DNA of 64,000 nt from Lepidodermella squamata (GCA_047495785.1 JBLDXI010000054.1:434001-498000), one strand, 5' to 3'; counted from the stretch's first letter, positions 3,166-54,798 are shown. Notes: generated from the sequence alone by a model not told the origin. Program-made: numbers and translations.

Positions 3166-5359
3166 ATTGTGTCTTTGTGTGTATATTTGCCAGGATACAA
3201 ACGAAGATGTTTATGTTTTTATGTTTTATGCCCCTATTGATGTTAAGTTTTTCTGGGCTGTAATTTAGACGTATTTAAACGTATTGTCCTGCAGTTTTAG
3301 TGTTATAAATTGTTGAATTCGTTTGTGCGAAGCTGACAAATCAACAACTGGAAAGCTTAAAAAAGGTGAGATTGCGATACATCATACTTTGTAGAAGCGT
3401 ATCTGAATAGTTCGAACTGAAATGGCCGGCTGTAAAGCGCTTTTCTCCCAAAAACAGAAATCGGTTGTTACTGGTCGGAACTATCGAGAGAGGTCTTCGA
3501 ACTAGAGCTCAGCTTCTGACTTTTACCGTGCCGTAATTCCTTTGAAATAATCGGAAAGGATTTGATTCTTCGAAAGCTGCCTTTTTTGCGAATTCACCTT
3601 TTCCGGCGAGGTGAAAGTTGTCAACTGTCCCTGGTTTTGTTTCCCCGATTCAAATGCGAATTTCATTATATTGTTTGGTAACGATTTCTGTTTTGTAATA
3701 TCTAAAGGCATTGTTCATCTGAATTTTAAATTTTGTCTAACATAATGCCGCGAACTCCATTTCATGCCGATCAAGTCTCTCAATTGAAGAAGGTAACGCT
3801 GAGACTTTGCTTTTTTAACATTTCTTCTTATTGTATTAAGTGCCACTGATATTCAACACTTGCTCAGTGCTTGGAGTTGAGGCGAAATCGCAAGATTACC
3901 AAGGATATGGCTGCGTTTATAGCGAAAAACATCGGCACAACGGTTGTTAGAGTTCAAAACTGGTTTCACGCAAGAAGGAAAGGAGTTGAAGAGAAAACTA
4001 AGAAGAAGTTGCGAATCGAAGATATTCTCGGACAAGAAAATTTCAAATTGTTGATTTTGGAGGTGCAACATGATCCCAAGTTGGCAAAGGCGAGAAAGCA
4101 GCTGCTAGCCCGAAACTTTGGCCTTCCTGAGTGGCAAGTTAAAAGATTTTTCAGTATGCATCGCATCAAACAAAAGGCTGTTCGCACGATCATGACAAAA
4201 CAGCAGAAGGAAATATTCGAAAAAGTAAGCTTTGAAACGATGTAAAGTATATTTCATCTATCAGAAATTCTTGAACTATTAAGTTTGCTGTTTACTTTTT
4301 CCAATGTTTAACGCCAATATTTTCATGGGGAAATCTTGCTTGTCAAAAATTAATGCCTTGGTTGCTGCTAGAAGTTCTCAGTCGACAAAAAATATTCGGG
4401 CTATTTTCTGGTAGTGCTTCTCATATATTTAATCAATATTCTGGTTACTCTTTTATCAGGAATTCAGGAAGAATTGCAGCATGTCACAGCAGAGATTGAA
4501 CGAAATTGCCGAAGTTATGGGCATAACATCTCGTCAGGCCGGATGTCTTGTTGCTAAACAACGAACACGAGAGGGAATCCGTAGAATGGCGAAATCTGAA
4601 TCCATTCTATTCACGAATTCTCAACTGGCAGAACTAGAGGAAGCATTCCAGTCAACAGTGGCGATGGGCGATAGCTTTGACGATGTCCTCGTTCAAAGAT
4701 TGGCCATCAACACTGGATTGAAGAAAACCGTGATCAGAAATCGTTCGAGTTGCGACGTAAGAGACCTCGTTAGGCAGTACTTTCATGCGGTTTGTAATAA
4801 AATACTTGGTACTGGTATAAGCTACTGTTTATTCGTTAGTAATAGCATCATTATCGCGGCGCATCCGATACCGAGCGGTTGCAACGCCTACCAGAATGCG
4901 TACTGCGCACAAACGCTTCAGACAATTTCTCCGTTATCATGGCCAAATTCTTAAAATCAACCAAGTTTATCCTCTTCTTCCTTATTTCACCTTCGTTCAT
5001 TTCGAGCGTAGTCTAGGATAATACTTTTCTGTCTCTCTGTATCTATATTACTAAACGACGAAGGTCCTCAACGGCTAAATTTGAATTTTCCTTTGTATTC
5101 GGCGGCATGCTTAAATAGTATACTTCTACTCACTGGGTAGCCGAGTGCTTAGTGTCATTAGATAGAGAATAAAAAACTACTCGAGCGAAAAATGCCAGAT
5201 TTCGAATCCGTCAAATCCGCAGTGTCAAAAATGCCAAAAAACAAATAGAGCGCTTTCTGATTTTGAACGCAATTTAATTTAAAATACGAAAACATTTTTA
5301 AACTGTTAGTTAATTACTAAATCAAATTCTTATTAATTGAAATTTAAATATTTTCCATG

Positions 5360-6145
5360 GCGACGCGTTTGCGGGGAAATTCAAAAATTCCGGTCGCCGG
5401 GCGCCGCGTCGCCTGACCTTTGGGGTTCCATTATCTCAACCAAGGACACGTCCACGGGGTCGGGGCATGGCAAATTCGTGCTCAGCATGGTCGAATTGAT
5501 AATTACAGCATGAGAAAAGCAAATAAATCAAAAAAAAATTAATTATGTTGATCTCATGCATTGTCGTCACTATTCACAGGTACCATGATGGAAGACGCTC
5601 TAGATGTTACTCCTTGAGGGCGAATGGCGACTTTTAAAAGCTTTTACTACTGCTTTTCTATCTTAGATTTGTTGATTTCGTAGAAATAGATGGTTAATTA
5701 GTGTTTTCACATCTCATGAACGTCCTTTGCAAGATGTTGGATGTTCATGTTACGCATCCCTTTTAGGTTTAACCTCACTCATCTATTGCAAGATCTTCTG
5801 AGACTGGCTCAGGTCTGTAGAGCATCTACCAAGATCATTTTATTAATGAATCAACTATGCTGAGTAAGAAAAACAACAGTAAAACCTTCGGGGAGTAATC
5901 CATCACCTCAAGGACTGAACTAATTCGACTTAGCCATGTTACAAGTGTTCTTGCCTGTGCATGAATCAGATATGCTAACCCTTTCATATATTCACATTTC
6001 TATCTGGGCTTTCTAATCAAATCGACCATGTTGATGACGAATCTTAAGTGCGTTAACTTCAGGGACGTGTCTTTAGTTGAGATTTTAGAACCCATCAGTG
6101 TAGTCGACGCGGTTACCAGTGATCCGAAATTTGAGAAATTCCACG
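5360..6145. mobile_element. Degenerate foldback element (long imperfect inverted repeat)
   Basis: 5420-5500 (GGGTTCCATTATCTCAACCAAGGACACGTCC...CATGGTCGAATTGAT) mirrors 6016-6095. 5613-5660 mirrors 5868-5913. Confidence 0.65.
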
Positions 6146-6325
6146 GTGGGTATACATTGGGTTCTAATTCGCCTGTTATTTACTAGTTGTCTTGTTGAAC
6201 CATGAACCATGACCCATGACCATCACCACTTGTTGAAACATGACCAGAGTCTTCGAAAGGGCATACTTTGTTATTGAGTTTCTCATTCCCGGAGCAACAT
6301 TGCATGCAACCCACGAAAATGCATA

Positions 6326-6714
6326 CCGTATTTTGTGGATAAACGACGATTAGTGACGAAAAATCGCAACCTATCCAACTTAACCACTTACCCAGCAGGC
6401 GCTCATGTAAGCCACTTCATACAAGGCCCTGCCTATTAATACGGTTCTGCCCAGTGTGCGAAGTAGGACTTGGGACCTGAGGTGTTTTCTACCTGTTTTC
6501 TAGAACCCAGCCGAAGAAACCAAAGGGTCCCCCCTGTGGTTTTTTCAGCCTTTCTCTGGTTGGAGCCCTGGAGCTGGGGTGTCGCGACACCCCAGCACCC
6601 CTGTACTTCGCACCCTGGTTCTGCCCTTTATTATTTCAAATGACCATTACCCTCTGCCCTTTATTCCGGTTCTGCCCAATAATTGGGTCCTGCCTAATAA
6701 TTCGTAAAATACGG
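6326..6714. mobile_element. Tc1/mariner/pogo-type MITE (TA TSD)
   Basis: TA|CCGTATTTT...AAAATACGG|TA. Internal CTGCCC repeats are shared with the element at 53360-53773. Confidence 0.65.
6452..6617. mobile_element. hAT-type MITE nested in the previous MITE (8-bp TSD GTTCTGCC)
   Basis: CAGTGTGCGAAGTA...TACTTCGCACCCTG with GTTCTGCC on both sides. Related copies at ~21098-21260, ~61190-61283 and ~61790-61926. Confidence 0.85.
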
Positions 6715-7753
6715 TATTATGGAACTATGGACTAGATGAGCCAATTTTTCGACTATTCAGCCCCTAAATCCTGAAAATGCCAAGATAGCACTTATTACGC
6801 TATTATTCATAACCTATTTTGTGAATATCCTTCTCCATTATCTCGCAGATATTTCGTTATCCTTCTTAAATTCTATGACATGAAAAAGCGATCACATATT
6901 TTTCTGTTTCGATCACAGAATCAATCGCATTTCATGTTTTGTCAACTTTTTATGAGCCGTTGAGCCGTACGAGCTAAAGTGAACTACAACCTACAACCTT
7001 GTGCGAAGCACGTGAAATCACTGGAAGTAGATTCGCAGCCGCACAGGGTCTATAGTAGAATCGCACAATGTTTGCGTACTTGGTAGCATTCGAGAATTGC
7101 TAGGATGATTTGCATCCCTACATCCTAAGAAAGATAGCGAATGTTCTTGGTAATGTCATCTGGTTAGCGATTTAGCGATAATTGATGATTAGCAATTAAC
7201 AGCGATTCCGCCGTATTCGAGTAATGCTCGATTGGCTTGATTCCTATACGACAAATCCAGACCCACCATGCAAGTTTGGGTTTCACGATTTTTGCGCGGA
7301 CTTCGTAATGAAATACTACGTCTAGAGCAAAATGCCACGGACTAATTGTTATCAAAGAAAACAAAGAAAGTATATTTTACAAAGCGCATCCACTCGGTCA
7401 TTTTTGTTGGAATCCTATAATTAGGGCTATCAGGAATGCTGACGGCACTTCAAACCGATCTATTGGCGAGAATGTAGATTCTCCGGGGTTCAGAGTAAGT
7501 GAAGGCTAAAAAGTGGCGCGTACTTCACGATGAGAACGGGTTACGGGTAGATCTCTGGAGCAACTGGAGCGATTTGTTCTGCTTGGCAAGGATAAATCAA
7601 AGCGCAGCTTGTTAGAGACAAATCTGATCTGCTCTAGGTATTAAAATTTAACACTTAATGAGCTTAATTAGTCTCCAATAGACTAATTCTTCGTTTTGAA
7701 AGGGGAGAAAACAGCATTCAAAGCAGGATGCATCGCCATCACTACTCCGTAGT

Positions 7754-7939
7754 TGTTAGCGTCGTTGAATAACTCGGATTCGGGCTTGTTCACGTCAGTT
7801 ACAGATTACAGACAGTTGACGGGTGTCAAGTTTGCTTCCCCTCTTCATTTATAACGCTCCTATCACCTTTTACTTGTCACTATTCATCTTGTAACTGACG
7901 TGAACAAGCCCAGATCTGAGTTATTCAACGACGCTAACG
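7754..7939. mobile_element. Hairpin MITE, copy 1
   Basis: ~50-bp TIRs GTTAGCGTCGTTGAATAACTC.../...GAGTTATTCAACGACGCTAAC. Confidence 0.8.
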
Positions 7940-8273
7940 CTCCCGTTTCTGTGGCTTACGAAGTTAGTTATCGTTAGTTAGTTTGCTAGATACCCAATAG
8001 AGTATCGCCGTCCTCTATTCTTGAAAATTGTTACTTCACCTGTTTCGGTTTTAGGGGATACATTTTCAGAAAACTTTGAATACCGCTTGTTTTATGATTG
8101 CGACACTACAAAGATTATCCGCTACCTTCCAGCGGCGGGGTCTACTTTCAATAATATTACGTGTTCATAAATATCATTCTATAATTTTTCGCAGTAATCA
8201 GATGAACTTTCTATTTAGAATGGGTCATTTCTAAAATAGTTAGTAATGATTCATCAAAATCTTATCGCAATAT

Positions 8274-8458
8274 CGTTAGCGACGTTGAATAACTTTAATT
8301 TGGGCTTATTTAAATCTGTTTCAAGGTCACGGGTGACAAGTAAAAATGACATTTTTCAAAGTACAAAGAGGCAAAAACAAAATGCTTTTTACTTGTTACC
8401 TATCAATTTGAAATAGATGCAAACAAGCCTAAATCCGAGTTATTCAGCGTCGCTAACG
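8274..8458. mobile_element. Hairpin MITE, copy 2 (ATAT TSD)
   Basis: ATAT|CGTTAGCGACGTTGAATAAC...GTTATTCAGCGTCGCTAACG|ATAT. Confidence 0.8.
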
Positions 8459-9951
8459 ATATCTCTCAAAGCTATTAAAGTAGCAATAGTGCATCCTATT
8501 AGCTGCCGAATTGTTAAATTGAAAATGTTAAATTCTGCATTGTTGATAGGATTATTTTACTTCAACTTTTACGCGAAGTCGCCCCTTTATTTATAGCTGA
8601 TTGGATATTGATTGGGAATCAGAAATGGAAAATAGGCGAAATTCCGGCAAAAGGTCGCTACTAAACTATTGCTGAGTGCTGGCTATTTCGATACATTCAT
8701 AGCAATTTGAGATGCAACCGCTCCGCAGTTGTAAACAACCGCAATATAGCGGTATAATAATATATAGAAATATGCGCTAGCACTGGCGGTCCCTTACGTC
8801 GCAACACGAACGAAATTGGTTCCAGGACAGGCGCAAATCTGCTGGCCTAGTAAAGAAACAAAAAACTCTCGATCCAAGTAGTATTCGCGCTCTCAATGCC
8901 GTGGGTTCAATTCTTGATTAAAGGCTGCAGTGTTCCAAATATGTTGTAAACAGGAATTCGCTGTATCGAGCCGTTTGGAAGTAGAAAGAAGGCTAGAGAT
9001 AGTGGAAAAGTTTGGATTAAAACCCAGCCAGGTTCGTCACTTCTTCGTTAGAAAACGGAAACAATTAGGTATAGCGAAAAAGAAGCAATCCCGTCCTCGA
9101 ACACTGGTTAATTTCCAGAAAAAAACCTTGACTAAGGTGTGAAGAGGCTTATAATTCCAAACGGTGTAATTTTTTAATTTCTTCTTTTTGCACTCAGGAA
9201 TTCAATGAGAATCCAGATCTACTGGAAACTGGAATGAGTCGCCTTGCAGAAAGTCTGGAAATCCCTTTTAACATTGTGAAAGGTTTCTTCGAAAATCACC
9301 GCTCAAAAGCTCGAGGTCCTGCTAGACGTCGAGCAAGAAGAGCATTGACCTGGGAACAGCGGCTTCTTCTAGAAAAGGTGATTCCTGAAAAGTTTCAAGA
9401 TTCCAAGAATTGCTTTATATCATCATTGCGATTCCATTTATTTAGGAGTATAAAATCTCCGAATTCGTAACTCATGAGCAAGCTCAACGCCTAGCTTCTT
9501 CAATGGGGCATTCAATCGCGAAGGCAATTACTAATGCATTTTAATTATTAGTTATTTTTTCAATTCTTTTCATTTAATAGATAAAGAGGTGGTTCAATTC
9601 TAAACGGTTTTATGAAAAAACTAAGCAGAAGACAGTTGGTTCTTGAACATCTTGGTTTCTCCTGTTACAAACTACAGTTCATGGCGAATATTTACCTACC
9701 TTACGGAACGGTTACAAGCAATTTTATCGGGCTTGGAGGTTTCTCCATCCGTATCTGGTATTATTACAGTTTTGAATAGGGAATTCCCAGGCTAAATACC
9801 CAGAAATCGTGATGAATATCGTAATTGTACATTATAGAAATTGTAATGATCTTTTATCTCATCAATTGTGACCGATTTTTTCCGTAGGTAAAAAACATAA
9901 AACATAAAAATCTAAATCTAGGTGTAATCTAAATACTTCTAAATACGCGAT

Positions 9952-10176
9952 TTGAAAGACGTTTTTGCTAAAAGCGTAATGGAGAGTGGGAAATTCGATG
10001 AAGCTCGCTGTAGAAGCATAGCTGGCAAGGTCGGATTGAAATTGACAGCGGTGAAGATGAAGCGCTGGTTCGCCCAGAAACGGAAATTGGTTGGCATCGG
10101 TGCGAGGCGAATTTTTCAGAGTGATCTTTTAACTAGAGCTCAGCTTCATACGAAGGACCGCGCCAAAATTCCTTGA
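9952..10176 (+). pseudogene. Isolated, divergent HD4-like homeobox fragment
   Basis: LKDVFAKSVMESGKFDEARCRSIAGKVGLKLTAVKMKRWFAQKRK aligns to HD4 (LQEAFQSTV..GDSFD.ALY..LA.KTGLK..V..WF...RK). Confidence 0.65.
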
Positions 10177-10574: not shown

Positions 10575-12211
10575 CACTTGAGAAGCCGGTCAGGTCTCTT
10601 ACTCGATGTAGATTATAAATATATTTTTTTAGCGTTCTTTATATTGTTAATTGCAATTTTTCAAACTCTTGCTCATCAGTGCTTCGATTTATTGCGGAGG
10701 CGTAATCTAAGCGCAACTAACAAAAAGGATATTGCTGCGTCATAGCGAGATTGGCCTATCCGTTTTAAAGTTGAAAACTGGGTTCACGCAAGGAAGAGAA
10801 AAAGTGTTGCGAAGATGATCAAGAATAGTCGGCGATTTCAAGATATTATTGGGGTCGAGAAATGCGAACTGTTGAAATTGGAAGTGAAACTTAATTCCAA
10901 GTTGCTCAAGGCGAGAAAGCAGCTGCTGGCACGAAAATTTGGACTTACCGAGCGTCAGGTTGAAAGATTCTTCAGCAAACATAGCACTCAACGAACGGCT
11001 CGCTTCAAGCTAACATCTCAGCAGAATGAAACATTCGAGAAGGTATAATCAAGATGCGATATTTGATTAATATTAGGAGTGATCGTTATAGGAATTCAAG
11101 CAGAATCCTTCCACTTCGTTGCAAAGACTCAACGAGGTGGCAGAAGCCTTGGGCATAACATTTTACCAGGCCACGCATCTTTTCAAAAAACGGCGAGCTC
11201 AATTGGGAATTCACGGTATAGCTGGGACATCTAAATCCGTTGGAATCACGGATTCTCAACTTGCCGAACTGCAGGAAGCATTCCAATCCACGTTGGTTAG
11301 GGGCGGAAGCTTTGACGATGCTCTCTATCAAGGTTTGGCCGAGAAAACCGGATTGAAAAGAACCGCGGTCATGAAGTGGTTCTTAGCCCAGCGCAAATCT
11401 GCTGGCCTCGTAAGGAAATACGAAACTCTCACTCGAAGTAGTATCAGCTTTCTGAATGCCGTGAGTTCAACTCTTGATCATAGTTTACAGTTTACAATGT
11501 ATATAAAATTGTGTGCCTCAGGAATTCGCTGTTTCGAGCCGAATAGAAGACGGCAGAGCGCTAGCAATTGCAGACAAGTTGGGATTAAATTTCAGAAAGG
11601 TCACATCTTTTTTCTATATGAAGCGGAGACACTTGAGAACTGTTAATAATGAGCAATCTCGTCTTGGCACACTGAAGCATGATCAACGAAATGCCTTGAC
11701 TAAGGTGTGATAGTGCTCATAATTCCTAACATTGACGTTTTGTGCTTTGTTATTTTGTTTTCAGGAGTTTCCTGAGAATGAAGATCCACAGAAAAATCGC
11801 ATGACTAGTCTAGCTGACAGAATGGAATCACCTTCTGATATTGTGAAACCTTTCTTCGAAATCCAAAATGGTAAAAAACGAGCTCCTGCTAGACGTCGAG
11901 GAAAAATCTTCTTTACCTTGGAGCAGCGTCTTCTCCTAGAAAAGGTGATTAACTCGATAAATTTCAAGATTCCATGATCGCTTTTATTCATCTTTCAATT
12001 TTCCAGGAGTATGAAATCTCTAAATTCGTAACACATGAGCAAGCTGAACGCCTAGCTACATCTATGGGATTATCGACCGAGAGGGCAATAAAGCTTTCAC
12101 TTTGTTTCCGAGTTCCTCATAAATTACTTCAATTTTTAGATACGCGGATGGTTCAGGTCGAAACGGTTTTATGAACAAGAGCAACATAAAAAACATAAGG
12201 AAGGATCATGA
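10575..12211 (+). pseudogene. Seven-homeodomain gene copy 2 (degenerate exon 1, frameshifted HD1)
   Basis: The exon 1 relic lacks an ATG and a GT donor. Exon 2 hits TAG at ~10742. Exons for HD2-HD7 are recognisable, with the GC donor after GAGAGG and last exon 12140-12211. Confidence 0.8.
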
Positions 12212-12950: not shown

Positions 12951-12964
12951 TAGCCCCGAGTAAG

Positions 12965-13985: not shown

Positions 13986-15248
13986 ATGTTGCCAACCCAG
14001 CTGAAAGCCGATCAGCGCTCTTACTTGTTGAAGGTAACGCCATGAATAATGCTTCAAAATTATACTATTATTTACTAATTTCAAATCTTACTCAGTGCTT
14101 CGATTTGATGCGAAATCGTATTCTTACTAAAGATATAGCTGAGCTCATAGCGAAAAAGATTGGCACATCGGTTGTGAAAGTGCGAAACTGGTTTCACAAA
14201 AGAAGAACAAAAAAAGACGTTGATGGGAAAGCTATGAAGATCTTGCGATTGAAAGATATTCTCGGGGAAGAAAACAACGAATTGTTGATGCTCGAAGTGA
14301 AAAATGATCCTAAACTGAGCAAGGGCAGACAGCAGATGCTGTCACGACGATTCGGCTTGACTGAGAGCCAGGTTGAACGATTCTTCCGCAAGCATCGAAG
14401 CCAACGAAGGGCACGTGTTCAATTGAAGTTGACATCCCATCTAATTGAAGAATTCGAGAAGGTTAAAACGAGGAGCGCTATTTGTTTTATCTGGTGGTGG
14501 ATTTTTTTTACAGAAATTCAAGCAGAATCCTGGCGCTTCAAAGAAAAGGTGCCGCGAAATGGCTGAATCCTTGGGCATAACAGTTAATCAGGCCACACGC
14601 CTTGTCTTAAAGCGACGAGCCCAAGTGGGATTACGTGGTAGAAAAGCAAAATCTGAATCAATTAGATTTACGAATTTTCAGCTGGCGGAACTACAGAAAG
14701 CATTCCATTCAACAATGGCAAGGGGCGACAGATTTGACGATGCACTTTATGGAAGTTTGGCTGAACAAACCGGATTGAGAAGGTATTGGGTCAGGAATTG
14801 GTTTGTTACCAAGCGCAAATCTGTTGGCCTCGGAAAGCGATTAGCTCTTGATCAAAACACTGCCTGCGTTTTAAATGCTGTGAGTTCACCCTTGGTGGAA
14901 GGTTGAAATATTCCAGATGTATTATTCTTCAGGATGGCCGAGCGCAACTGACCTTGGAACAGCGACTTGTCCTGGAGAAGGTGGTTTTATTAGTTTGAAG
15001 AGTTGGAGATATTTATTCGCTCCATTATGCTAATAATTTAGGAGTATGCAACCTCAAAATTCGTAAAGCACTTGCAAGCTGAACGTCTAGCTGCCTCAAT
15101 CGGATATCCCACCGAGAAGGCAATAACGTTTACACTTTATTTCCGAGTTCTTTCTTTATTCCTTTCATTTTTGTAGATAAAGAAGTGGTTCAGGTTGAAA
15201 AGAGAGAATGAAAAAAAGAAACAGAAGGAAGAAGCATTAGGTTTGTGA
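13986..15248 (+). CDS. Multi-homeodomain gene copy 3, in-frame 5-HD variant (~325 aa)
   Basis: Exons 13986-14033, 14096-14461, 14514-14879, 14933-14980, 15042-15119 (GC donor), 15177-15248. The frame is open; the HD5 body and HD6 are deleted. Confidence 0.75.
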
Positions 15249-16238: not shown

Positions 16239-17873
16239 ATGTCGCCAACCCAGTTTTATGCCGATCAGGTCTCTTACCTTATAAAGGTAGCGCTTTATTA
16301 AACTTACTTGTTATTAGTGTTTTTTTTACAATTTTATTTGCTCAGTGCTTCGATTCGATGCGAAATCGCGTTCTTACTAAGGAAATCGCCGAGTTGATAG
16401 CAAACGAGATTGGCACATCGGCTGTTAAAGTTAAAAAGTGGTTTCACACAAGGAAGGGAAAACGTGTTGATAACATGAGCAGGAAGTTTCGGCGATACCA
16501 AAATATTATAGGGGAGGAGAAATACGAACTGTTGAAATCGGAAGTGAAACATGATCCAAAGTTGACCAAGGCGAGAAAGGGACTGCTGGTACGACGATTC
16601 GGCCTCACCGAGCGTCAAGTTGAAATGTTCTTTTACAAGCATCGTATTCAACGACAGCAACCTTTTTGCTTAACACCCCAGCAGAAAGAAATGTTCGGGA
16701 AGGTATAACTGAGAACTGATAATTGCTTTCCTATAATGTTCCCGTAATGAACTGATAATGTTCGCTATAGGAATTCAAGAAAAATCCTGTCGCGTCTCAG
16801 CAAAGATGCGGTGAAGTGGCTGAAGCCGTGGGAATAACATTCAACCAGGCCAAGCGGCTAATCGTTAAACGACGAGCTGAAGTGGGGTTGCACGGTAGAA
16901 TGGCGAAATCTGAATCCATTCGATTCACAGAATTTCAACTGGCAGCACTGCAGGAAGCATTCCAGTCCACGGTGTCAAGGGGCGACAGCTTCGACCTTGC
17001 CCTTTATCAAAGTTTGGCCAAGAAAACCGGATTGAAGAAGGCCGTGGTCAATAATTGGTTCTTAACCCGGCGCAAATCTGCTGGCCTGGTAAATAAACGA
17101 GTACGTCTCGAACCAAGTTCTATCCGCGCTCTTGATGCAGTGAGTGCAACTCTTGATCAAAAGTTGCCATGTTCCTAATATTTGTGCCTCAGGAATTTGC
17201 TTTATCTAGCGGAATGTTTCGCAACAGAATGCAAACAATTGCGGAAAATTTGGGATTAACTGTCAGACAGGTTGAACACTTTTTCGTAATGAAACGGAGG
17301 CAATTGAGAACTGCGAAAAAAGAGCAATCTTGTCTTCGCACGCTCAACAATTTTCAACGAAAAGCCTTAAATAAGGTGCGATGAGGCATTGAATTTAAAT
17401 CGATGTCGGTGTACGTATTGTTATTTTTGCAATCAGGAATTCAATGAGAATCCAGATCTCCTGGAAACTGGACTAACTCGTCTTGCTGAAAGGCTGGAAA
17501 TCTCGTTTAATACTGTGAAAAGTTTCTTCGAAATCCGCCGTTCAAAAGTCAGAGGGCATTCTAGAAGCCGAACGACCTGGGAACAGCGGTTTCTTCTTGA
17601 AAAGGTTATTGTTCGAGTGTGAAGATTGAATGGATTGCTTTGCTTTATCATTGTGCTTCAATTTATTCAGGAGTATGAAATCTCCAAATTTGTAACACTC
17701 AAGCAAGCTGAACGCCTAGCTACATCATTGAGATTATCGACCGAGAGGGCAATACAGCTTACACTTTTTCCGAGTTCCCCGAATATTTCTTCAATTTATA
17801 GGTACGGGGCTGGTTCAATTCGAAACGATTTTCTGAAAAAAAGAAAGAGAAGAAGCGGGAGACGATTGGATAA
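16239..17873 (+). CDS. Seven-homeodomain protein, copy 4 (intact, ~424 aa)
   Basis: Exons 16239-16286, 16346-16702, 16771-17139, 17193-17375, 17437-17604, 17671-17748 (GC donor), 17802-17873. All introns are phase 0. Seven helix1 (Q..L.K.F) / helix3 (WF/FF..RR) units. Confidence 0.85.
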
Positions 17874-18013: not shown

Positions 18014-19688
18014 ATGTCGCCAACCCAATTTAATGCCGATCAAGTATCTCACTTGATGGAGGTAACGCGAAGGCTACGTTTATTGAACAGTTCTTCGTAT
18101 TGTAAATGAATGTTTGTGCTTACTCAGTGCTTCGAGTTGATGCGAAAGCACAACCTTACCAAGTATATGGCTGAGGTTATAGCGAGAAATATCGGCACAA
18201 CGGTTGTTCGAGTTCAAAATTGGTTTCACAGAAGAGGAAGGAAAGGAGTTGAAGAGAAAACCAAGAAGGTATGGCGATATGAATTTATTCTCGGGAACGA
18301 AAAGAGCAAATTGTTGATGTCGGAAGTGAAGCGTAATCCCAAGTTGTTCAAGGCGAGGAAGCAGCTGTTGGCGCGAGAATTCGGTCTCACCGAGCGCCAA
18401 GTTGAAAGATTCTTCCGCAAGCATCGTATCCAACAGAGCACATGCGTTCGCCCGAAAGTGACACAGCTGCAGAAGGAAATATTCCAGAAAGTATGTTGTA
18501 AGGCGATATGAGACCCTCCGCCATAAATACATAAACGAAAATCTTTATCCCGGATACTTTTTTACTGCTACCATTTTTTTGCCATTAGGAATTCATACAG
18601 AATACCAGCGCGTCGCAGCATAGATTTCGCGAAATTGCTGAGATTGCAGGCATAACATTCTGTCAGGCCAGACGTCTTGTCGTTCAAAGACGGGCAGAAG
18701 TGGGACTCCGACGCAGAAGGGCGAAATCTGAACCCCTTGAATTCACCAAGTCCCAACTAGCAGAACTGCAGGAAGCATTCCAGTCAACAATGGTGAGGGG
18801 CGATAGCATTGACGATGCCCTATATGAAAGTTTGGTTGGGAAAACTGGATTGAAAAAAACTGCGATCAAGAATTGGTTCTCCGACCAGCGCAAATCAGGT
18901 GGCCTCGCGAGGAAACAAAAAATGCTCGATACAAGTATTATCTGCGCTCTAAATGCTGTGAGTTTTTGCTAAAACGTTTCAATGATCCAAATAAGCTTTT
19001 CCTCAGGAATTCGCTGTATCGAGCCGAATGGAAGACGGCAGAGTGCAAGCAATTGCGGACAAGTTGGGATTAACTTTTGGACAGGTTACACATTTTCTCG
19101 CTATCAAGCGAAGGCAATTGAGGACTGCAAGAAATGAGCAATCCCGGTGCAGCGGACTGGAGCGTGACCAACGTAATGCGTTGACTAAGGTGTGATTAGT
19201 CTCTTAATGCCAATCGATAACTTTTTCTATGTTCAGCAATTCGATGAGAATCCAGATCTACAGGAAAGTGGAATAACTCGTCTGGCTGAACGATTGGAGA
19301 GCCCTCTTAATATTGTGAAACGTTTCTCCCAAACGCACCGTGCGGAAGCTAGAGGTCCTGGTGTATGTCGAGTTACCTGGGAGCAGCGGCTTCTTCTAGA
19401 AAAGGTAAACAAAAATTAACAAGTTTGATTTTTGAAGGGTGAAGGCGTTACTTTGTTTCATAATTTTGATTCAATTTTTTCAGGAATATGAAATCTCCAA
19501 ATTCGTAACACGCGATCAAGCTGAACGACTAGCAACGTCAATCGGATATCCGGCCGAGAAGGCAAAATAAACCCTACACTGTTATTTTCCTTAGAAAATG
19601 TTTTGATCATTTTTAGATACAGCGGTGGTTCAGTTGGAAACGTTATTCGAAAAAAGGAAACCGGAGAAAGAATCAATCGGTTTCATAA
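18014..19688 (+). CDS. Seven-homeodomain protein, copy 5 (intact, ~426 aa)
   Basis: Exons 18014-18061, 18128-18490, 18589-18957, 19007-19189, 19237-19404, 19484-19561 (GC donor), 19617-19688. No stop codons. Confidence 0.85.
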
Positions 19689-19918: not shown

Positions 19919-20430
19919 ATGTTAGACCCAAAAAAGCAACTTTCACAAAATCAATCGTCCTATTTGCTAAAGGTTACAACTGACCAATTCCTTAATCGTT
20001 GTTAGTGATACTAATTTTGTGTCTACAAGAGCTTCGAAGTGATGCGCGATCGTATTCTCACTAGCGGTATTGCAAATCGCATAGCGAAGAAGATTGGCAT
20101 ATCGGTTTTTCAAGTTGGAAATTGGTTTTACAGAAGAAGAAAACATGAAAGGCATTGGCGCCCACCTCGATTGGAAATGATTAGCCAGTGGCAATGGCGT
20201 AGAATCATCAGGGTAGCTGAATCATGATTCGCATTCCTGAGAATTTGTCTGTAACCCTTATCCAGGAGGTCGATAATCACTACGTCCTTCCTCGGCATGT
20301 AATAACTAAGCTGATGGCCGAAACTGGACTGCATGCGATTCAAATCGGCCGCTGAGACGAGCTTCCACAAAATACCGCGCATTAATGATGGCGAAGAACG
20401 GATATCAAACGCCTTGCAAAAAGGTATTAC
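19919..20430 (+). pseudogene. B-type homeobox gene (HD1 plus a distinct second HD), stop inserted in helix 3
   Basis: MLDPKKQLSQNQSSYLLK|SFEVMRDR...VGNWFYRRRK...WRRIIR|EVDNHYVLPRHVITKLMAETGLHAIQ, then a foreign patch carrying TGA at 20353-20355. Paralog at 30412. Confidence 0.7.
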
Positions 20431-21097: not shown

Positions 21098-21260
21098 CAT
21101 GGTGCGAAGAACAGGTGTGCTGCGGTGTCGTGACCCCAGCTAACGGGACATCAACCTGAGGAAGGCTAAAAAACCACAGGGGGATCCTTTGATATCTTCG
21201 GATGGGTCCTGGAAAACAAGTAGAAAACATCTCAGCTCCCGGATCCTACTTAGCACACTG
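21098..21260. mobile_element. hAT-type MITE (family of 6452-6617)
   Basis: CATGGTGCGAAG...CTTAGCACACTG; the body is the reverse complement of 6452-6617. Confidence 0.75.
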
Positions 21261-25469: not shown

Positions 25470-25488
25470 ACTAATTTTGTTTGTAATC

Positions 25489-26625
25489 ATGTCGAAGCAG
25501 ACCCAACTTGATGCCGATCAGGTCTCTTACTTGATGAAGGTAACGCCAGGGCTTCGCTTTTTTTACAGTTCTTTTAATGTTAACTACTATTTTTCTCAGT
25601 GCCTCGAGTTGCTGCGAAAACGCAAGCTTACCAAGGATATGGCTGAGTTCATAGCGACAAAGATTGGCACAACGGTTGTTAAAGTTCGAAACTGGTTCCA
25701 AACGAAAAGACGAAGAGGAGTCGAGGTGAGAACTAAGATTTGGCGTTTCAGAGATATACTAGGGAAAGAGAAAAACGAGCTTTTAATGCTGGAAGTGAAA
25801 CATGATCCGCAGCTGTTCAAAAGCAGGCAGCAGAGGCTGGCGCAACGATTCGGCTTGACGGAAAGCCAGGTTGAAGTATTCTTCCGCAAGTATCGCGCCA
25901 AACGAAGGGCTCATGTTCGCCTGAGGTTAACGCCCCAGCAAAATGAGAAATTTGAAAAGGTTACTCGGCCAGCAGGCTTCCTCGGGGTCCTCTGCCCACC
26001 TTCGGTGTGTGATCGTTCCGTGTCTCTTCCGTCTTTCTACATCTTGTACGTCTTGTCTTGTATAATCCTGGTTCCTCTTCTCCTTTCTTTTCTTTTTCTT
26101 CCTGTTGCACTCCTTCTGTTCTGATTAACCCATTACATGTAATCTTCTGCATACGATAAATATTCCTTTAGCTCGCCCACTAGCGTCCTCAGCGCACTGC
26201 CGCCGGCAAGCGCTTGTCGTCTCGCAACCGCGTGCCATCTCTGTCACTTTGTATATATTGTTCGCAAGGAAGGAATTTATTATTTTATATTGTTCTTTTA
26301 TATTTTTGTGACTGATGGACAAATAAATTTGAATTTAGAATTTAGAATTTAGAATTTAACGAAGTTGCTGAAGCTTTGGGCATCACATTTAGTCAGGCCA
26401 CACGTCTTGTCTTAAAACGACGAGCTCAAGAGGGAATATGCGGTAGAAGAGTCAGATCTGAACCCATGAAAATCTCGAATCCTCAAGAAGCAGACCTTCA
26501 GGAAGCATTCCTGTCCACAGCGGTGGTTGGCGGCAGCTTTGACGATGCCCTCTATGAAGGTTTGGCCAAGAAAACTGGATTGAAAAAGTACGTGGTCAGG
26601 AATTGGTTCTCAACCCGGCGCCAAC
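25489..26625 (+). pseudogene. Seven-homeodomain gene copy 6, disrupted and truncated by LINE sequence
   Basis: Exons 1-2 are intact. Intron 2 and the start of exon 3 are replaced by a LINE 3' end (25965-26358). The gene ends after HD4 WFSTRRQ. Confidence 0.8.
25965..26358 (+). mobile_element. LINE 3' end with (GAATTTA)n tail
   Basis: GCCAGCAGGCTTCCTCGGGGTCC as at 52710, pyrimidine UTR, then AATAAATTTGAATTTAGAATTTAGAATTTAGAATTT. Confidence 0.85.
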
Positions 26626-27520
26626 TTGACCGGCACCACGTGCGGGCCCATGACGCTCCCTGACGGCAGTTTCCTCCACCCTTCCGTGGCTCTGGCCGAT
26701 CAGCTACTCACCCACTTTATCGCCCCGATGTATCCCTGCTGTGATCCGGCCACCGATGTGGCAACGCGTCAGCGGTGGTTCGAGCTGGAACATGCGATGG
26801 CCAACGACCCGGCCTTGCATCCCGTCGGTGCGATTCGGCTTCCTGGGCCTCAGAACTTCAACGTCAGCCAGCGAATGCTAGCGCGCGAGATCGATCGACT
26901 GCAGCCTTTCAAGGCACCTGGACTCGATGTCATCAGCAATGTCTACTACAAGTGGGGCGATGTTCCCCTGCAGATACACCTCAGGCGGCGGTACAACCTC
27001 CAAGAGTGAGGTTTTCGCATTCTCCTGTCGTCCCCCCGGTGCGAGGCTCGTGCTTGGAGGCGCCGTCATCCCGCAAGTCTCTGTAATGCGAATTCTGGGC
27101 ATTCTGTTCGATGACACGTTGACCTGGAACAAGTTGACATTGTGTTTGAGGTTGTAAGTTGAAAAAAATCCGCACGCTGATTGGTCAGTTGGCTTGTATC
27201 CATGACTCCGCCTTGCTACTTGATCGTGCGATCCATAAAATGTTTGCAAAAAATACTTCTTTTATGAATGGTTTTACGCATTTGTTGGAAACGCGTGCTA
27301 CGATACGGCCTTCATAAAAATAATAAAAGCGAATATTTATATGGATCGCACGATAAAGTAGCAAGGCGGAGTCATGGATACAAGCCAACTGACCAATCAG
27401 CGTGCGGATTTTTTTCAACTTACAACCTCAAACACAATGGACAAGTTGACCTGCCCCATATCGACCACGTGCTCAATCGCTGCCTGGACAGGCGCCTTGT
27501 CGTGCTGTGCCTGCGCCTTT
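26625..27520 (+). mobile_element. Internally deleted LINE ORF2 fragments
   Basis: LQPFKAPGLD (RT domain 0) and IPQVSVMRILGILFDDTLTW (RT thumb). Confidence 0.8.
27138..27439. mobile_element. MITE with ~100-bp TIRs inserted in the LINE fragment (~9-10-bp TSD ACAAGTTGA)
   Basis: CATTGTGTTTGAGGTTGTAAGTTG... / ...CAACTTACAACCTCAAACACAATG. Confidence 0.85.
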
Positions 27521-27699: not shown

Positions 27700-29691
27700 A
27701 TGTCTCAAACCTTTCTTGAAACCGGTCAGATCTGTTACTTGATGAAGGTATCGACCGGAACAGTTCTTTATATTGATAACAACTATTTTCCAACCTTTTC
27801 TCAGTGCTTCGAGGTGATGCGAAATCGTAATCTTACTAAGCAGATCGCTGAGTGTATTGCGGAAAAGATCGGCACATCGATTACTAAAGTTCGAAATTGG
27901 TTTCATACCAGAAGGAAGAAAAGAGTTGATGATAGGGCCCAGGTGATCTGGCGTTACAGAACTATTCTAGGGAAAGAAAACTACGATTTGTTGCTGCTGG
28001 AAGTGAAACGTGATCCTAAACTCTCCGAGGGAAGACTGCAGATGCTGGCACAGCGATTCGGCCTGACGGAGGGCCAGGTACAGAGATTCTTCTGCAAGCA
28101 TCGCAGCCAACGAAATACATATCTTCGTGCGTTGACATCCCAGCAAAATGAGAAATTCGAGAAGGTGAAACTGAGACGCAATATTTGCCTAATCTTGTTA
28201 TTGAATTTTACAGGAATTCGAACAGAATCCCGGCACTTCGCAGCAGAGATCCCGCGAGATTGCTGAAGCTCTTGGCATAACATTTAGTCAGGCTAAACGT
28301 CTTGTCGCTAAACGGCGAGCGCAAGAGGGAATCCGCGGTAGAACAGTGAAAGAGAATAGATTCACGAATTCTCAACTGGCTGAACTAGAAGAAGCATTCC
28401 AGTCAACGGCGGTGATGGGCAATAGATTTGACCTTGCTCTTTATGGAGGTGTGGCCAAGAAAACTGGCTTGAAAGGAACCGAGGTCAGGCAATGGTTCCA
28501 TATCCGGCGCAAATCTGCTGGCATCGGAAGGAAAAATATCGCTCAAGGTAGTATCCGCGCTCTGAATGCTGTGAGTTCAACCGTTGGTCAAACGTTGCTA
28601 TGATTAAAATATGTTTTGCCTTAGGAATTCACCTTATCTAGTCGAATGGAAGGCCGCAGAGCGCAGGCCATCGCGGAAACGTTGGGATTAACTTCCAGAC
28701 AAGTTATATGCTTTTTCAGAACCAAGCGGAAACAATTACCGTACTGCCCGGAACAAAAACCATGACATTTATTTTTTTCAAACATTGATGAACCCCTGAC
28801 ATTTAAAAGGGACTGACATTTATTTCGGGCCTGACATTTATTTATCCGAACCAACCAGTAATTGACTAGATAACCAAAATGGCATACATTTCCCTGAGAT
28901 TCTACATATTTTGACCCAAAATTTGGTCCCTGACCTTTCTAAGTGCCAATGGTAGAAATTATATCAAATCAAAAAGGCTAAAACTACCTTATTAGTGATC
29001 TTCAGTATTGTCCCCGCCACTGACCTGACATTTATTTCGGGCCTGACATTTATTTTTACGAACGACCTCTAACCTCTGACAATTATTTGAGGCTGCCATT
29101 TATTCGAGGCTGGCATTATTTTCGGGCAGTACGGTAAGAACGAAAAATGAGCGATGTCTTCCTCGCAGACTCAAACATGAGCAACAAAATGCCCTAACTA
29201 AGTTGTGATGAGGCTGTTTTAACATCCATGAATTTGTTTTATTGCGATCAGGAATTCAATGAGAATCCAGAATTGAATGAAACTGAATTTACTTGCCTAG
29301 CTGAACGACTGGAAGTCCCTTTCGATGTTGCGAAACGTTTCTTTCAAAAACTGAGAGCTGAAGCCAGAGGACGACTCAAAACCGTACTGACAAGGGAACA
29401 GCGGCGGTTTCTAGAAAAAGTGATTGACTCGAAAAACTTCAGAGGATTGCTTTGTTATATCGTTGTGATTCAATTGATTCAGGAGTATGAAATGTCCAGA
29501 TTCGTAACACGTGAGCAAGCTGAACGCCTAGGACTTTCAATGGGATATCCGCCCGAGAAGGCAATAAAGCTTATACTTTCTTTCTGACGTTCCTTTTTAA
29601 TATTTCGTCCCCTTTTCAGGTGCAGAGATGGTTCAGGTGGAGAAGGGTAAATGAAAAAAGGGATCTGAAAAAAGAAGTGGTCATTTCATGA
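27700..29691 (+). pseudogene. Seven-homeodomain gene copy 7, exon 4 interrupted by a MITE
   Basis: All 7 exons are recognisable. MITE at 28739-29134. The exon 4 donor reads AAG|TTGTGA versus AAG|GTGTGA in paralogs. GC donor retained. Confidence 0.8.
28739..29134. mobile_element. Tc1/mariner/pogo-type MITE (TA TSD)
   Basis: TA|CCGTACTGCCCG...CGGGCAGTACGG|TA with internal TGACATTTATTT repeats. Removal restores KRKQLRT. Confidence 0.85.
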
Positions 29692-30029: not shown

Positions 30030-30235
30030 GGAATTGTCAGGAATCTCCTAATTCGTAACTCGCGAGCAAGCTTAACGCCTAGCAATTTCAACCGGATATC
30101 CGACCAAGATAAGCTTACACTGTGCTTTTTCTCAAAATACTGTTTGAATCATTGTTGAGATTCAGAGGTTGGAAACGATATTCGAAAAAAATAAACAGAA
30201 GAAAGAAGCCGGTTTCTGCACATCTCATCTCACGT
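30030..30235 (+). pseudogene. Relic of the HD7 exons (3' end of a further copy)
   Basis: Degenerate match to 19484-19710. The block 19480-20450 is duplicated at ~30030-30940. Confidence 0.7.
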
Positions 30236-30411
30236 CGAATGATCAGCGAGAATTTGGATTTTGGATTTTTAATTTAGCGATTCTCTCGACCCTGTCTGAT
30301 ATGACATCAGCAAATTGCTTGATATGAAATAACTCTTCAAGAAATTTTTATTTTATTGTTGAAACTAATTTCCCTTCGTAGATATTCACAGGCTGCTTTT
30401 ACTTGAGCTTC

Positions 30412-32485
30412 ATGTTGGACCCAACAGAGAAACGTTCAGACAATCAACTGTCTTATTTACTAAAGGTAACAACGAACCAATTGCTCAATGGCATTTAGGT
30501 AGTGATACTTATTTGTTCCAACAAGAGCTTCGAAGTTATGCGTGGTCGCATTCTCACTAGCGGTATTGCAAATCGCATAGCGAAAAAGATTGGTACGTCG
30601 GTTGTTCAAGTTCGAAACTGGTTTTACAACAAACGGAGAGCTGAAAAGCATCGCAGATCAACTCGGCAAGAATGGATAAGACCGTGGCAAAAACTTAAAA
30701 TCATCGAGGTAATTGAATATCATTCGCATTCATTTTCTTAAATTAGTCTGTAGGAGGTCGATAAGCACTACGTACTTCCTCAGCATGTGATAACTGAGCT
30801 AATGGCCGAAACTGGACTGCATGCGATTCAAGTAAAAGGAGTTTACAAGAAATACCGCAGCTCAATGATGGCGAAGAACGGTTATCAAGCGCCTTGGAAT
30901 AGGGTATTATAGCCACTATATTAGGTTCATCAATTAACTTTCCAACTTAGCTTCACGTTCCCAAAGTCGTCAAGGCTAAGGCTAAGCAGAAAGAAACGAA
31001 TGAAAAAAACGAGTCGTCGATGTTGGAAGTGAAACAGAATCCCAAGTTGGTCAAAGCAAGAAAAAAAGTTCATGTGAAATCTAAGAGGATTGGGCGATTG
31101 GAAGATATTCTCGGGGAAGACGAAATCAAATTTTTGATTTTAGAAGTGACACGTAATCCCAAGTTGTTCAAGCAGAGAAAGCAGGTGCTGGCTAAAAAAT
31201 TTGGCCTTACTAAGCGCCAAGTTGAAATATTCTTCAATAAGCATCGCATTAAACAAAAGACACATGATCGGGCCAGGCTGAAAAAGCAGCAGATGGACAT
31301 TTTTGAGAAGGTAAGCCGTGAGGCGATACTAAAATAATATTTTGTTTTGTTTTCATCAGGAATTCAAACAGAATCCCGGCACTTCGCAGCAAAGATTGCA
31401 CGAAATTGCTACAATCGTGGGCGTAACATTATATCAAGCCGCTTATCTTGTCCGTCGAAGACGAAACCAACTAGGAATCCGCAGGCGAACCGTAATATCT
31501 GAACCCAGTAGATTCTCGAATTCACAGTTGGCAGAACTGCAGGAAGCATTTCAGACAACAGTTACGAGGGGCGATAAGTTCGACGTTTCTCTCTATCGAA
31601 GTTTGGCCAAGAAAACTGGATTGAAATGGGAAGTAATTAGGAATTGGTTCTATAACCAGCGAAAATCTGCTGGACTTGAAGTCAAACCAATCAAGAAAAG
31701 AGAAACTCTCGGTCCAAGTAGTATCTGCGCTCTGGAAGCTGTGAGGTCTTCATCATATCGCTGACAATTTTTAATGTTGTGTCATAGGAATTCGGTGAAT
31801 CCAGCGGCATGAGCGATGTCAGACTTCAAGCATTAGCGGAAAAGTTGGGATTAACTATCTCCCAGTTCACTACTTCTTCGCAAGAAAACGGAAACAATTG
31901 GGTATAGCGAAAATTAACAAGGCGAGTCTTTTGTCACTCAAATTTGATCAACGGCAAGCTTTGATGAAGGTGCGCTCAGGCTTTGAAGGTGCTCAAATTT
32001 TTGAAGGTTAAACATGGTTTAATAGGAATTCGATAAGAATCCAGATGTAGATGAAGCAGATATGGCTCGCATAGCTGAGAGTCTGGAAATTCCGTTTGCT
32101 CTTGTTGAACGCTTTTTCGAATATCATCGCAGTAAAAAAAGAGGCCCCGCCACAAAGCGAGCAAAGAATTTCCAATACTTCAGTTGGGACCAGCGTATTC
32201 TTTTAGAAAAGGTTATTAAGCTAATAATTCAAAAACATTAATTAATTCATGGTTTTCGAATTCACTCAGGAGTTTCGAATTTCTGAATTTGTGTCTCACG
32301 AACAGGCTAAAGAGCTCGCAGCAACTTTCCGATGTTCCGCTCAGAAGGTATGGAGTAGGCCTTATACATAAATTTTCCAGGTTTTATGAAAGTTGTTCGT
32401 TATCTGTTAGGTGAAACAGTGGTTCAACACACAGCGATTTCTTGGAAGGAAGAAAGAATCGAAACATGAAATTGCATCATCATGA
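30412..32485 (+). pseudogene. Chimeric B-type/7-HD gene (8 HDs plus a partial HD2 duplication), 1-nt frameshift in HD5
   Basis: B-type exons splice (AGG|GTATTA...TTAG|CTT) in frame into ORF 31020 (HD2 onward). CAG-TTCACTAC at ~31865 lacks the G of the paralog CAGGTT. The last intron uses GT. Confidence 0.7.
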
Positions 32486-54797: not shown

Positions 54798-54798
54798 T

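What the first reader, a model, noticed from the sequence alone, without database searches (positions are those of the whole stretch)
3745..32485. Tandem array of genes encoding proteins made almost entirely of seven homeodomains
Seen: splicing the short ORF pieces (e.g. 16239-17873, 18014-19688) gives ~425-aa proteins, about 7 x 60 residues. Each unit has helix-1 (Q...L.K.F) and helix-3 (V..WF/FF...R) signatures, and there is no other domain. About nine copies plus relics lie head to tail in 29 kb; three have open frames and the rest are disrupted. Known: most homeobox proteins have one HD. Multi-HD proteins exist (DUX, ZHX, ZFHX, some nematode CEH proteins), but I do not recognise this family. 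Inference: a lineage-specific poly-homeodomain array evolving by rapid birth and death. It could be a modular long-site DNA reader analogous to poly-zinc-finger families (TE control) or to DUX-type early-embryo/germline arrays.
Basis: partly seen in the sequence, partly recalled or inferred. Interest (0 to 1): 0.92.

Follow-up and report, generated by a model that had tools for sequence, protein, structure and literature searches.

The report
Tandem array of seven-homeodomain genes
An unidentified invertebrate genome carries about nine head-to-tail copies of a gene whose roughly 425-residue, very basic protein is nothing but seven tightly packed homeodomains; it is a previously unseen sequence family of a rare but already known kind of protein.

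Summary
Between 3745 and 32485, all on the + strand, lie eight gene copies (A-H), a 5' stump of a ninth and one small relic.

The gene has 7 exons and 6 phase-0 introns of 47-98 nt at identical positions in all copies. D (424 aa) and E (426 aa) are intact. C is an open, in-frame 5-homeodomain deletion form. A is broken only by a 4.07-kb transposon. B, F, G and H are pseudogenes.

The protein is seven homeodomains back to back with no other domain (pI about 10.5). This rests on Pfam hits, AlphaFold models that superpose on solved homeodomains at about 1 Å, and exactly seven hits to an outside homeodomain model.

Coding constraint is real: dN/dS is 0.3-0.5 overall and 0.16 at core positions, and exons are more alike than introns. 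The seven units are about 20% identical to each other but about 58% identical between copies, so the architecture predates the array.

No close relative exists among 1.84 billion representative proteins (best E 4.6e-16, other multi-homeodomain proteins, no collinearity).

Asn51 is absent from 43 of 46 units, so a canonical long-site DNA reader is doubtful. The closest precedent is C. elegans CEH-99/CEH-100. Function is untested.

The parts
3745..9646 (+). Copy A. Exons 3745-3792, 3868-4224, 4460-4741 | 8814-8900, 8954-9136, 9198-9377, 9446-9523, 9581-9646. All exons are open (425 aa if the insert is ignored). Exon 3 is split inside helix 3 of homeodomain 4.
4742..8813 (.). 4.07-kb non-coding DNA transposon with about 25-bp terminal inverted repeats and a duplicated AAAT. 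It interrupts copy A.
9949..10110 (+). Relic of homeodomain 4 (exon 3, profile positions 59-110).
10680..12211 (+). Copy B, a pseudogene. Exon 1 has degenerated (no ATG or donor) and exon 2 has an in-frame stop. Exons 3-7 are open.
13986..15248 (+). Copy C. It is open at 309 aa. Exons 4 and 5 are deleted in frame, so exon 3 joins exon 6 across a 162-nt intron. This gives a 5-homeodomain variant with a chimeric fifth unit.
16239..17873 (+). Copy D, intact, 424 aa. Exons 16239-16286, 16346-16702, 16771-17139, 17193-17375, 17437-17604, 17671-17748, 17802-17873. Introns are 53-68 nt; the last is GC-AG.
18014..19688 (+). Copy E, intact, 426 aa. Exons 18014-18061, 18128-18490, 18589-18957, 19007-19189, 19237-19404, 19484-19561, 19617-19688. 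It starts only 140 nt after D's stop.
19919..20155 (+). 5' stump of a ninth, H-like copy: exon 1 and the first 42 codons of exon 2. It is followed by the same inserted sequence as in H's exon 2 and then by LINE fragments.
25489..26657 (+). Copy F, truncated. Exon 1, exon 2 and codons 15-123 of exon 3 remain. Repeat-derived insert, including a LINE-like piece, in intron 2; nothing downstream.
27700..29691 (+). Copy G, a pseudogene. A 396-bp MITE (28739-29134, 12-bp perfect inverted repeats, TA duplication) sits in exon 4, and the exon-4 donor is TT instead of GT. The other exons are open.
30412..32485 (+). Copy H, the most divergent pseudogene. It has a 425-bp insert in exon 2 (30637-31061) and a 1-nt frameshift in exon 4 near 31865. 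Its last intron has a GT donor.

Best explanation
This is a lineage-restricted, tandemly duplicated family of real protein-coding genes in an unidentified animal genome.

Each gene (7 exons, 6 short phase-0 introns) encodes a protein of about 50 kDa with pI about 10.5. The protein consists solely of seven homeodomain folds with no linkers and no other domain.

The seven-unit architecture arose long before the array. It was probably built by exon duplication, because five of the seven units carry an intron at the same homeodomain position, 18/19. The whole gene was then amplified as a unit of about 1.78 kb. The array is now being eroded by transposon insertions, point lesions and unequal recombination (birth and death).

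Inferred, not shown: the protein is nuclear and binds nucleic acid multivalently. Each unit would dock helix 3 mainly through backbone contacts (conserved Arg53, basic residues at 52, 55 and 57). Readout would be non-canonical or relaxed, because Asn51 and Arg5 are missing and positions 47, 50, 51 and 54 differ freely between units and copies.

The confidence given is for the whole statement. The structural and evolutionary part is near 0.9; the binding mode is near 0.5.
For: Gene structure. Splice sites are conserved at identical codons in all copies. Homeodomain 7 is only reconstituted after removing the GC-AG intron, and it then scores second best of the seven units.

Coding constraint. Pairwise dN/dS is 0.3-0.5. 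Pooled values are 0.16 at core positions and about 1 in the N-terminal arm. Exons are 74-75% identical against 50-61% for introns.

Homeodomain identity. This rests on Pfam, PDB sequence hits to engrailed, aristaless, DUX4 and ZHX, and AlphaFold models (pLDDT about 72). The models' three-helix units superpose on solved homeodomains at 0.8-1.6 Å, and all top Foldseek hits are homeodomains. Positions 16 and 48 are invariant within each unit across copies, and positions 20, 34, 45, 49 and 53 are strongly conserved.

Architecture older than the array. Units are 20% identical to each other but 58% identical between copies, and every unit class is monophyletic.

Charge. Net charge is +38 to +50 and K+R is 20-24%.

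Decay and recombination.
Against: There are no transcript data, so splicing and expression are inferred from sequence only.

Asn51 occurs in only 3 of 46 units. DNA binding itself is therefore not assured.

No activation, repression or localisation motif was identified.

Only 2-3 of about 9 copies are open, so the locus as a whole could be on its way out.

The species is unknown, so 'lineage-restricted' rests on absence from libraries. Those libraries also lack this species' other genes.
Confidence: 0.6

Rival explanations
1. It is a canonical sequence-specific transcription factor that reads one long composite site with seven homeodomains. This would make it analogous to poly-zinc-finger repressors of transposons or to DUX-type early-embryo activators.
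For: The units have the homeodomain fold. Multi-homeodomain proteins such as DUX4 bind DNA with both domains, and DUX4 is the top Foldseek hit. The recognition positions 47, 50, 51 and 54 are the most variable between paralogues while the scaffold is fixed, a pattern also seen in fast-evolving zinc-finger families. The genes form a tandem array with rapid turnover.
Against: Asn51 is absent from 43 of 46 units and Arg5 is mostly absent. Pooled dN/dS at 47, 50, 51 and 54 is 0.41, not above 1. There is no effector domain. No target data exist.
Confidence: 0.2
2. The homeodomain folds no longer bind nucleic acid. The protein would be a protein-protein scaffold or has some other role, as proposed for some divergent homeodomains. 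From my own knowledge, HOPX and the dimerising homeodomain of ZHX1 are examples.
For: The key base-contacting residues are lost. Selection acts mainly on the hydrophobic core.
Against: Net charge is extreme and conserved at +38 to +50. Arg53 and basic residues at 52, 55 and 57 are retained, which is what backbone contacts need.
Confidence: 0.12
3. The whole array is a decaying, non-functional remnant. The open copies would simply not have been hit yet.
For: Six or seven of about nine copies are broken. The array sits among transposons.
Against: dS between copies is 0.5-0.7 while dN/dS is about 0.4 and 0.16 in the core. All splice sites are conserved, and even the broken copies keep most exons open. 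The family was therefore under purifying selection for most of its history.
Confidence: 0.06
4. The gene is cargo of, or derived from, a mobile element, and its copies spread by transposition rather than by tandem duplication.
For: An unrelated 5-homeodomain library protein (P0001) lies directly upstream of a piggyBac-type transposase on six contigs.
Against: All copies are head to tail on one strand in one 29-kb block, with a 1.78-kb period at D-E. No transposase ORF and no copies elsewhere in the window; terminal repeats around the unit were not searched for.
Confidence: 0.04

Closest known systems
C. elegans CEH-100 (12 homeodomains) and CEH-99 (4) (Hench et al. 2015, PMC4448998; Bürglin & Affolter 2016, PMC4901127)
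   Same: The proteins consist of many tightly packed, divergent homeodomains, some shorter than 60 residues. They are lineage-specific and fast evolving, lie in duplication-rich regions, and have no known function. The eight-unit C. nigoni proteins that were among the best library hits also lack Asn51, carrying Asp51 instead.
   Different: There is no collinear or unit-to-unit similarity to those C. nigoni proteins. Here there is a fixed count of seven units, a conserved intron at homeodomain position 18/19 in five units, and a head-to-tail array of about nine paralogues rather than two dispersed genes.
DUX4 / D4Z4-type double-homeobox arrays (mammals)
   Same: Homeobox genes are repeated head to tail, more than one homeodomain sits in each protein, and evolution is fast. 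The DUX4 double homeodomain is the best structural match over two units.
   Different: From my own knowledge, DUX has two PRD-class homeodomains with Asn51 plus a C-terminal activation domain, is intronless within its repeat, and is mammal-specific. Here there are seven units without Asn51, six introns and no extra domain.
ZHX1-3 / HOMEZ and ZFHX (ZF-class multi-homeodomain proteins)
   Same: They carry three to five homeodomains per protein, some of them divergent. There are weak sequence hits to ZHX1 and ZHX2 homeodomains.
   Different: Those proteins carry C2H2 zinc fingers and long linkers (PMC7144352). Here Pfam finds no zinc finger, there are only 3-6 Cys per protein, and there are no linkers.
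Amphioxus Muxa / Muxb (orphan multi-homeobox genes, cited in PMC6118893)
   Same: They are orphan, lineage-specific genes with several homeoboxes.
   Different: The window shows no CpG depletion and has 50-70-nt introns. Nothing in the 1.84-billion-protein library scored better than E 4.6e-16.
Unnamed poly-homeodomain array on ENA contig ERZ26273096:ctg154794 (locus L002)
   Same: It has at least four head-to-tail genes of about 510 aa, each made of eight packed homeodomains. The copies are about 51% identical to each other, and most units lack Asn51.
   Different: The three complete genes are single ORFs. The contig has GC 36.6% and comes from a different, unknown organism. There is no collinear unit similarity to the window's family. 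It is undescribed, so it is a parallel case rather than a known family.

Membership tests
Homeodomain superfamily (Pfam PF00046) | Profile match above the curated cut-off | tested here: met
   Exon 2 (homeodomain 2) scores 32.8 and 37.3 bits, and exon 3 (homeodomain 4) 30.2 and 27.7 bits, against a cut-off of 22.9. Copy D's exons 4 and 5 are borderline at 21.8 and 22.7; copy E's gave no Homeodomain hit. A home-made canonical homeodomain model finds all 7 units at 9-32 bits.
Homeodomain superfamily (Pfam PF00046) | Three-helix fold of about 60 residues | tested here: met
   The AlphaFold models of exons 2 and 3 put helices where expected. Units 2 and 4 superpose on engrailed, aristaless and ALX4 at 0.8-1.6 Å with target TM-scores of 0.75-0.9. 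Units 5-7 were not modelled. Unit spacing is 56-66 residues.
Homeodomain superfamily (Pfam PF00046) | Hydrophobic core signature L16, F20, W48, F49 (or the allowed substitutes listed in PMC4901127) | tested here: met
   Position 16 is L or F, 20 is F, V or Y, 48 is W, F or L, and 49 is F, I or V in all seven units. Positions 16 and 48 are invariant within each unit across copies.
Homeodomain superfamily (Pfam PF00046) | Asn51 in the recognition helix (near-invariant base contact; my own knowledge) | tested here: not met
   Asn is present in only 3 of 46 units: A unit 6, H unit 1 and H unit 4. The units are homeodomain folds, but canonical DNA readout cannot be assumed.
CEH-99/CEH-100-type poly-homeodomain proteins | Protein made of many tightly packed homeodomains with no other domain, and lineage-specific | tested here: met
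   Seven units fill 424 aa. There is no close relative in the libraries.
CEH-99/CEH-100-type poly-homeodomain proteins | Sequence orthology (unit-to-unit collinearity) | tested here: not met
   The unit-by-unit score matrix against two C. nigoni multi-homeodomain proteins (P0002, P0005; their relation to CEH-100 was not checked) shows no diagonal. CEH-100 itself was not available.
DUX (double homeobox, PRD class) | Two PRD-type homeodomains plus a C-terminal activation domain | tested here: not met
   There are seven units and no C-terminal domain. Similarity is only at fold level.
ZF-class multi-homeodomain proteins (ZHX, HOMEZ, ZFHX) | C2H2 zinc fingers together with the homeodomains | tested here: not met
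   Pfam finds no zinc-finger hit on any exon. There are 3-6 Cys per protein.
Amphioxus Mux | Orthology to Muxa/Muxb | not testable with these tools
   No Mux sequence was on hand. Indirectly, no library protein scores better than E 4.6e-16.

The most novel reading that the evidence does not exclude
Poly-homeodomain proteins that have given up Asn51 may form a recurrent, convergently evolved class. They would be encoded in fast-turning-over tandem arrays in several invertebrate lineages: this window, the L002 array and the Caenorhabditis multi-homeodomain genes. They would act as multivalent binders of repetitive DNA (satellites or transposons), with variable helix-3 surfaces tracking their targets. 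That would be a homeodomain counterpart of KRAB zinc-finger arrays.
Probability: 0.15. Interest if true: 0.8.

Novelty: new variant of a known kind. Interest (0 to 1): 0.55.

Why it matters
Almost all homeobox genes encode a single homeodomain. Proteins that are nothing but packed homeodomains are rare curiosities with no known function; the published extreme is CEH-100 (PMC4448998, PMC4901127).

This locus adds a clean, well-resolved example. The 7-unit architecture is fixed. Intron positions record how it was built. About nine paralogues are caught at every stage from intact to dead.

It also points to a possible rule: in the window's family and most other poly-homeodomain proteins examined here, the near-invariant Asn51 is missing. 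If that holds, it suggests a distinct way of using the homeodomain fold. It would also give a tractable system (D, E and the 5-unit C) for testing what multivalent homeodomains bind.

As it stands, this is a new family of a known kind. It is useful to homeobox evolution specialists but does not change a paradigm.

Tried and rejected
Species identification. None of these named the species:
- Exact-protein look-ups of two single-exon neighbours found nothing.
- The Cys-loop ORF has only a 29% hit, to an oyster receptor.
- The LINE reverse transcriptase matches only unnamed metagenome contigs.
- Rfam and tRNA scans are empty.
- No telomere-type repeats were found.

What can be said: it is an animal, because it has canonical Cys-loop receptors. 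CpG observed/expected is 1.12 and introns are 47-98 nt.

Homologue searches:
- The word-indexed search with exon 2 found nothing.
- The exhaustive profile search found only 94 weak hits.
- The metagenome-contig scan found nothing.

Collinearity with other multi-homeodomain proteins: there is none.

Positive selection on recognition positions: not detectable with pooled Nei-Gojobori counts. Site models were not available.

Tandem Repeats Finder reports nothing because the copies are only 65-75% identical.

A 0.5-kb GT-less 'intron' reading of the inserts in A, G and H was rejected. They have inverted terminal repeats and target duplications (A, G), or lack splice sites and recur elsewhere in the window (H).

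The spliced full-length protein was not submitted to the remote tools, because it has no single reference. Exons were used instead, so units 5-7 were not structure-predicted.
Full report
**What is there**

The window is animal DNA, about 42% GC, with GC-rich LINE islands.

All are on the + strand between 3.7 and 32.2 kb. tblastn with its exons resolves eight copies, A-H. Exon HMMs add a 5' stump of a ninth copy (19919-20155) and a relic of homeodomain 4 (9949-10110). There is nothing on the minus strand and nothing beyond 32.5 kb.

**Gene model**

Copy D reads as seven exons:
- 16239-16286
- 16346-16702
- 16771-17139
- 17193-17375
- 17437-17604
- 17671-17748
- 17802-17873

In D the introns are 53-68 nt and all are phase 0. 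In every copy the same codons are flanked by AG and GT.

The last intron lies inside helix 3 of the seventh homeodomain, at position 44/45. It has a GC donor in A, B, C, D, E and G and a GT donor at the same place in H. Only after its removal does unit 7 read as a homeodomain. It then scores second best of the seven units against an outside homeodomain model. That is good internal evidence for the junction.

Five of the seven units (1, 3, 5, 6, 7) carry a phase-0 intron at homeodomain position 18/19. Exons 4 and 5 therefore each encode 'helix 2-3 of one unit plus helix 1 of the next'. This is the footprint of growth by exon duplication.

**State of the copies**

| Copy | State |
|---|---|
| D (424 aa), E (426 aa) | Intact |
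| C | Lost exons 4-5 in frame; remains open at 309 aa with five units |
| A | Every exon open, but a 4.07-kb non-coding element with about 25-bp inverted ends and an AAAT duplication sits in helix 3 of unit 4 |
| B | Lost exon 1; has an in-frame stop |
| F | Truncated after exon 3, with a repeat-derived (partly LINE-like) insert in intron 2 |
| G | A 396-bp MITE in exon 4 and a TT in place of that exon's GT donor |
| H | A 425-bp insert in exon 2 and a 1-nt frameshift in exon 4 |

The H-type insert also follows the ninth-copy stump, so those two copies share ancestry.

The best partner of a copy changes from exon to exon. A pairs with E in exons 2-3 but with D in exon 5. B pairs with D in most exons but with E in exon 4. 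This mosaic fits recombination or gene conversion within the array.

**Is it coding and constrained?**

- Pairwise dN/dS is 0.40-0.48 over the full length for A, D and E, with dS 0.5-0.7. Per exon it is mostly 0.3-0.5.
- Pooled over units and copies, dN/dS is 0.16 at core positions, 0.41 at helix-3 positions 47, 50, 51 and 54, and about 1.06 in the N-terminal arm.
- Exons are 74-75% identical and introns 50-61%.

The family has evolved as a protein for most of its history.

**Are the units homeodomains?**

- Pfam Homeodomain passes its cut-off on exons 2 and 3. Copy D's exons 4 and 5 are borderline; copy E's equivalents gave no Homeodomain hit.
- PDB sequence searches return only homeodomains, apart from one designed repeat protein. 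The hits are engrailed, aristaless/ALX4, DUX4, ZHX and CDX.
- AlphaFold models of exons 2 and 3 have pLDDT about 72 and helices where expected.
- All top Foldseek hits to those models are homeodomains. Single units superpose at 0.8-1.6 Å, and the DUX4 double domain covers two units.
- A model built from 76 canonical units of unrelated library proteins finds exactly seven domains in A, D and E and five in C.

In homeodomain numbering, positions 16 and 48 never vary within a unit. Positions 20, 34, 35, 39, 45, 49 and 53 are strongly conserved. This matches the accepted core signature (PMC4901127).

Units are 56-66 residues apart with no linkers. Unit 4 has four extra residues in loop 1 and unit 1 has two.

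**Age of the architecture**

Units are about 20% identical to one another, with a maximum of 35%. Equivalent units in different copies are about 58% identical. Each unit class is monophyletic. The seven-unit gene is therefore much older than its amplification, and relatives should exist in sister species.

**What argues against a canonical DNA reader**

Position 51 is Asn in only 3 of 46 units. Elsewhere it is T, K, M, I, S, D, A, R or W. Positions 50 and 51 are the most variable of all, and Arg5 is mostly absent. From my own knowledge, Asn51 is the near-invariant adenine contact.

Arg53 and basic residues at 52, 55 and 57 are kept. The proteins carry a net charge of +38 to +50, with pI 10.4-10.8.

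I therefore favour multivalent nucleic-acid binding driven by the backbone, with relaxed or unconventional specificity. This step is inferred, not shown.

**Relatives**

- The word-indexed search found nothing.
- An exhaustive profile search of 1.84 billion representatives gave 94 hits. The best E-value was 4.6e-16 and none was below 1e-30. Nearly all hits were matched in several stretches, as multi-homeodomain proteins would be.
- Among them were two C. nigoni proteins and unnamed metagenome proteins.
- Unit-by-unit scoring shows no collinearity with any of them.
- JGI metagenome contigs hold no relative.

Two side results matter. One hit, P0009, lies in its own head-to-tail array of at least four 8-homeodomain genes on an unrelated contig. 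Those copies are about 51% identical to each other. In addition, most of these other poly-homeodomain proteins also lack Asn51.

**Comparison with the literature**

C. elegans CEH-100 (12 packed homeodomains) and CEH-99 (4) are lineage-specific and of unknown function (PMC4448998). CEH-100 is called the most extreme case (PMC4901127). Other multi-homeobox genes listed are Hdx, dve/Compass, Zfhx, Zhx/Homez, amphioxus Muxa/Muxb and Dux (PMC6118893). The kind is therefore known. This sequence family, its fixed seven-unit plan, its intron pattern and its nine-copy array are not.

**Verdict**

The 'birth-and-death, lineage-specific poly-homeodomain array' reading is supported. The functional analogy to zinc-finger or DUX arrays is untested and is weakened by the missing Asn51. 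This is a new variant of a known kind, of moderate interest.

Noticed in passing
window 34602-63687, minus strand: A second tandem family of at least seven nAChR-like Cys-loop receptor genes. Three are single-exon ORFs of 373-376 aa (34602-35723, 40530-41651, 46404-47534). They have a canonical C-x13-C loop but almost no M3-M4 loop. Four more are split into two ORFs each (48675-49865, 56818-57981, 59587-60750, 62247-63687). The best library hit is only 29% identical.
   Followed up: partly
window 21489-23891, minus strand: An 800-aa single-exon ORF with an ANF_receptor domain followed by hydrophobic segments (class-C GPCR-like by my reading). It lies inside the homeobox array, between copy E with the ninth-copy stump and copy F.
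   Followed up: no
window 17874-18013, and after the stops of copies B, C, D and G: D's stop and E's ATG are only 140 nt apart. A conserved TTCATTTTCAGT motif follows the stop of several copies by about 70 nt. This may be an operon-like trans-splice acceptor or an initiator-type core promoter. It cannot be decided without RNA data.
   Followed up: partly
window 9524, 12085, 15120, 17749, 19562, 29561; compare 32348: The GC-AG intron is conserved in six paralogues at homeodomain position 44/45, while the most divergent copy, H, has GT at the same site.
   Followed up: yes
window 4742-8813 and 20848-21260: A 4.07-kb non-autonomous DNA transposon with no ORF over 66 aa, about 25-bp inverted ends and an AAAT target duplication. 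Other fragments of the same element lie near the GPCR-like gene.
   Followed up: partly
window 28739-29134: A 396-bp MITE with perfect 12-bp terminal inverted repeats and a TA duplication, which is Tc1/mariner-like by my own knowledge.
   Followed up: partly
window 365-2887, 20128-20870, 50100-52900, 54700-55300: Fragments of a GC-rich (about 58%) non-LTR retrotransposon family in a 42% GC genome. The reverse transcriptase ORF 51493-52755 is 44-63% identical only to unnamed JGI and ENA metagenome contigs.
   Followed up: partly
whole window: CpG observed/expected is 1.12, so there is no CpG depletion. With 47-98-nt introns this points to a small-intron invertebrate without germline methylation. 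The species was not identified.
   Followed up: partly
L002 10001-18479 (ENA ERZ26273096:ctg154794): An unrelated eukaryotic contig (GC 36.6%) has its own head-to-tail array: three intact single-ORF genes of about 510 aa with eight homeodomains each, plus one copy in pieces. The copies are about 51% identical and mostly lack Asn51.
   Followed up: partly
L003 431-3395, L004 432-3396: A 405-aa protein with five homeodomains (P0001) lies 230 nt upstream of a 505-aa piggyBac-type transposase ORF, on six contigs. It may be transposon cargo.
   Followed up: no
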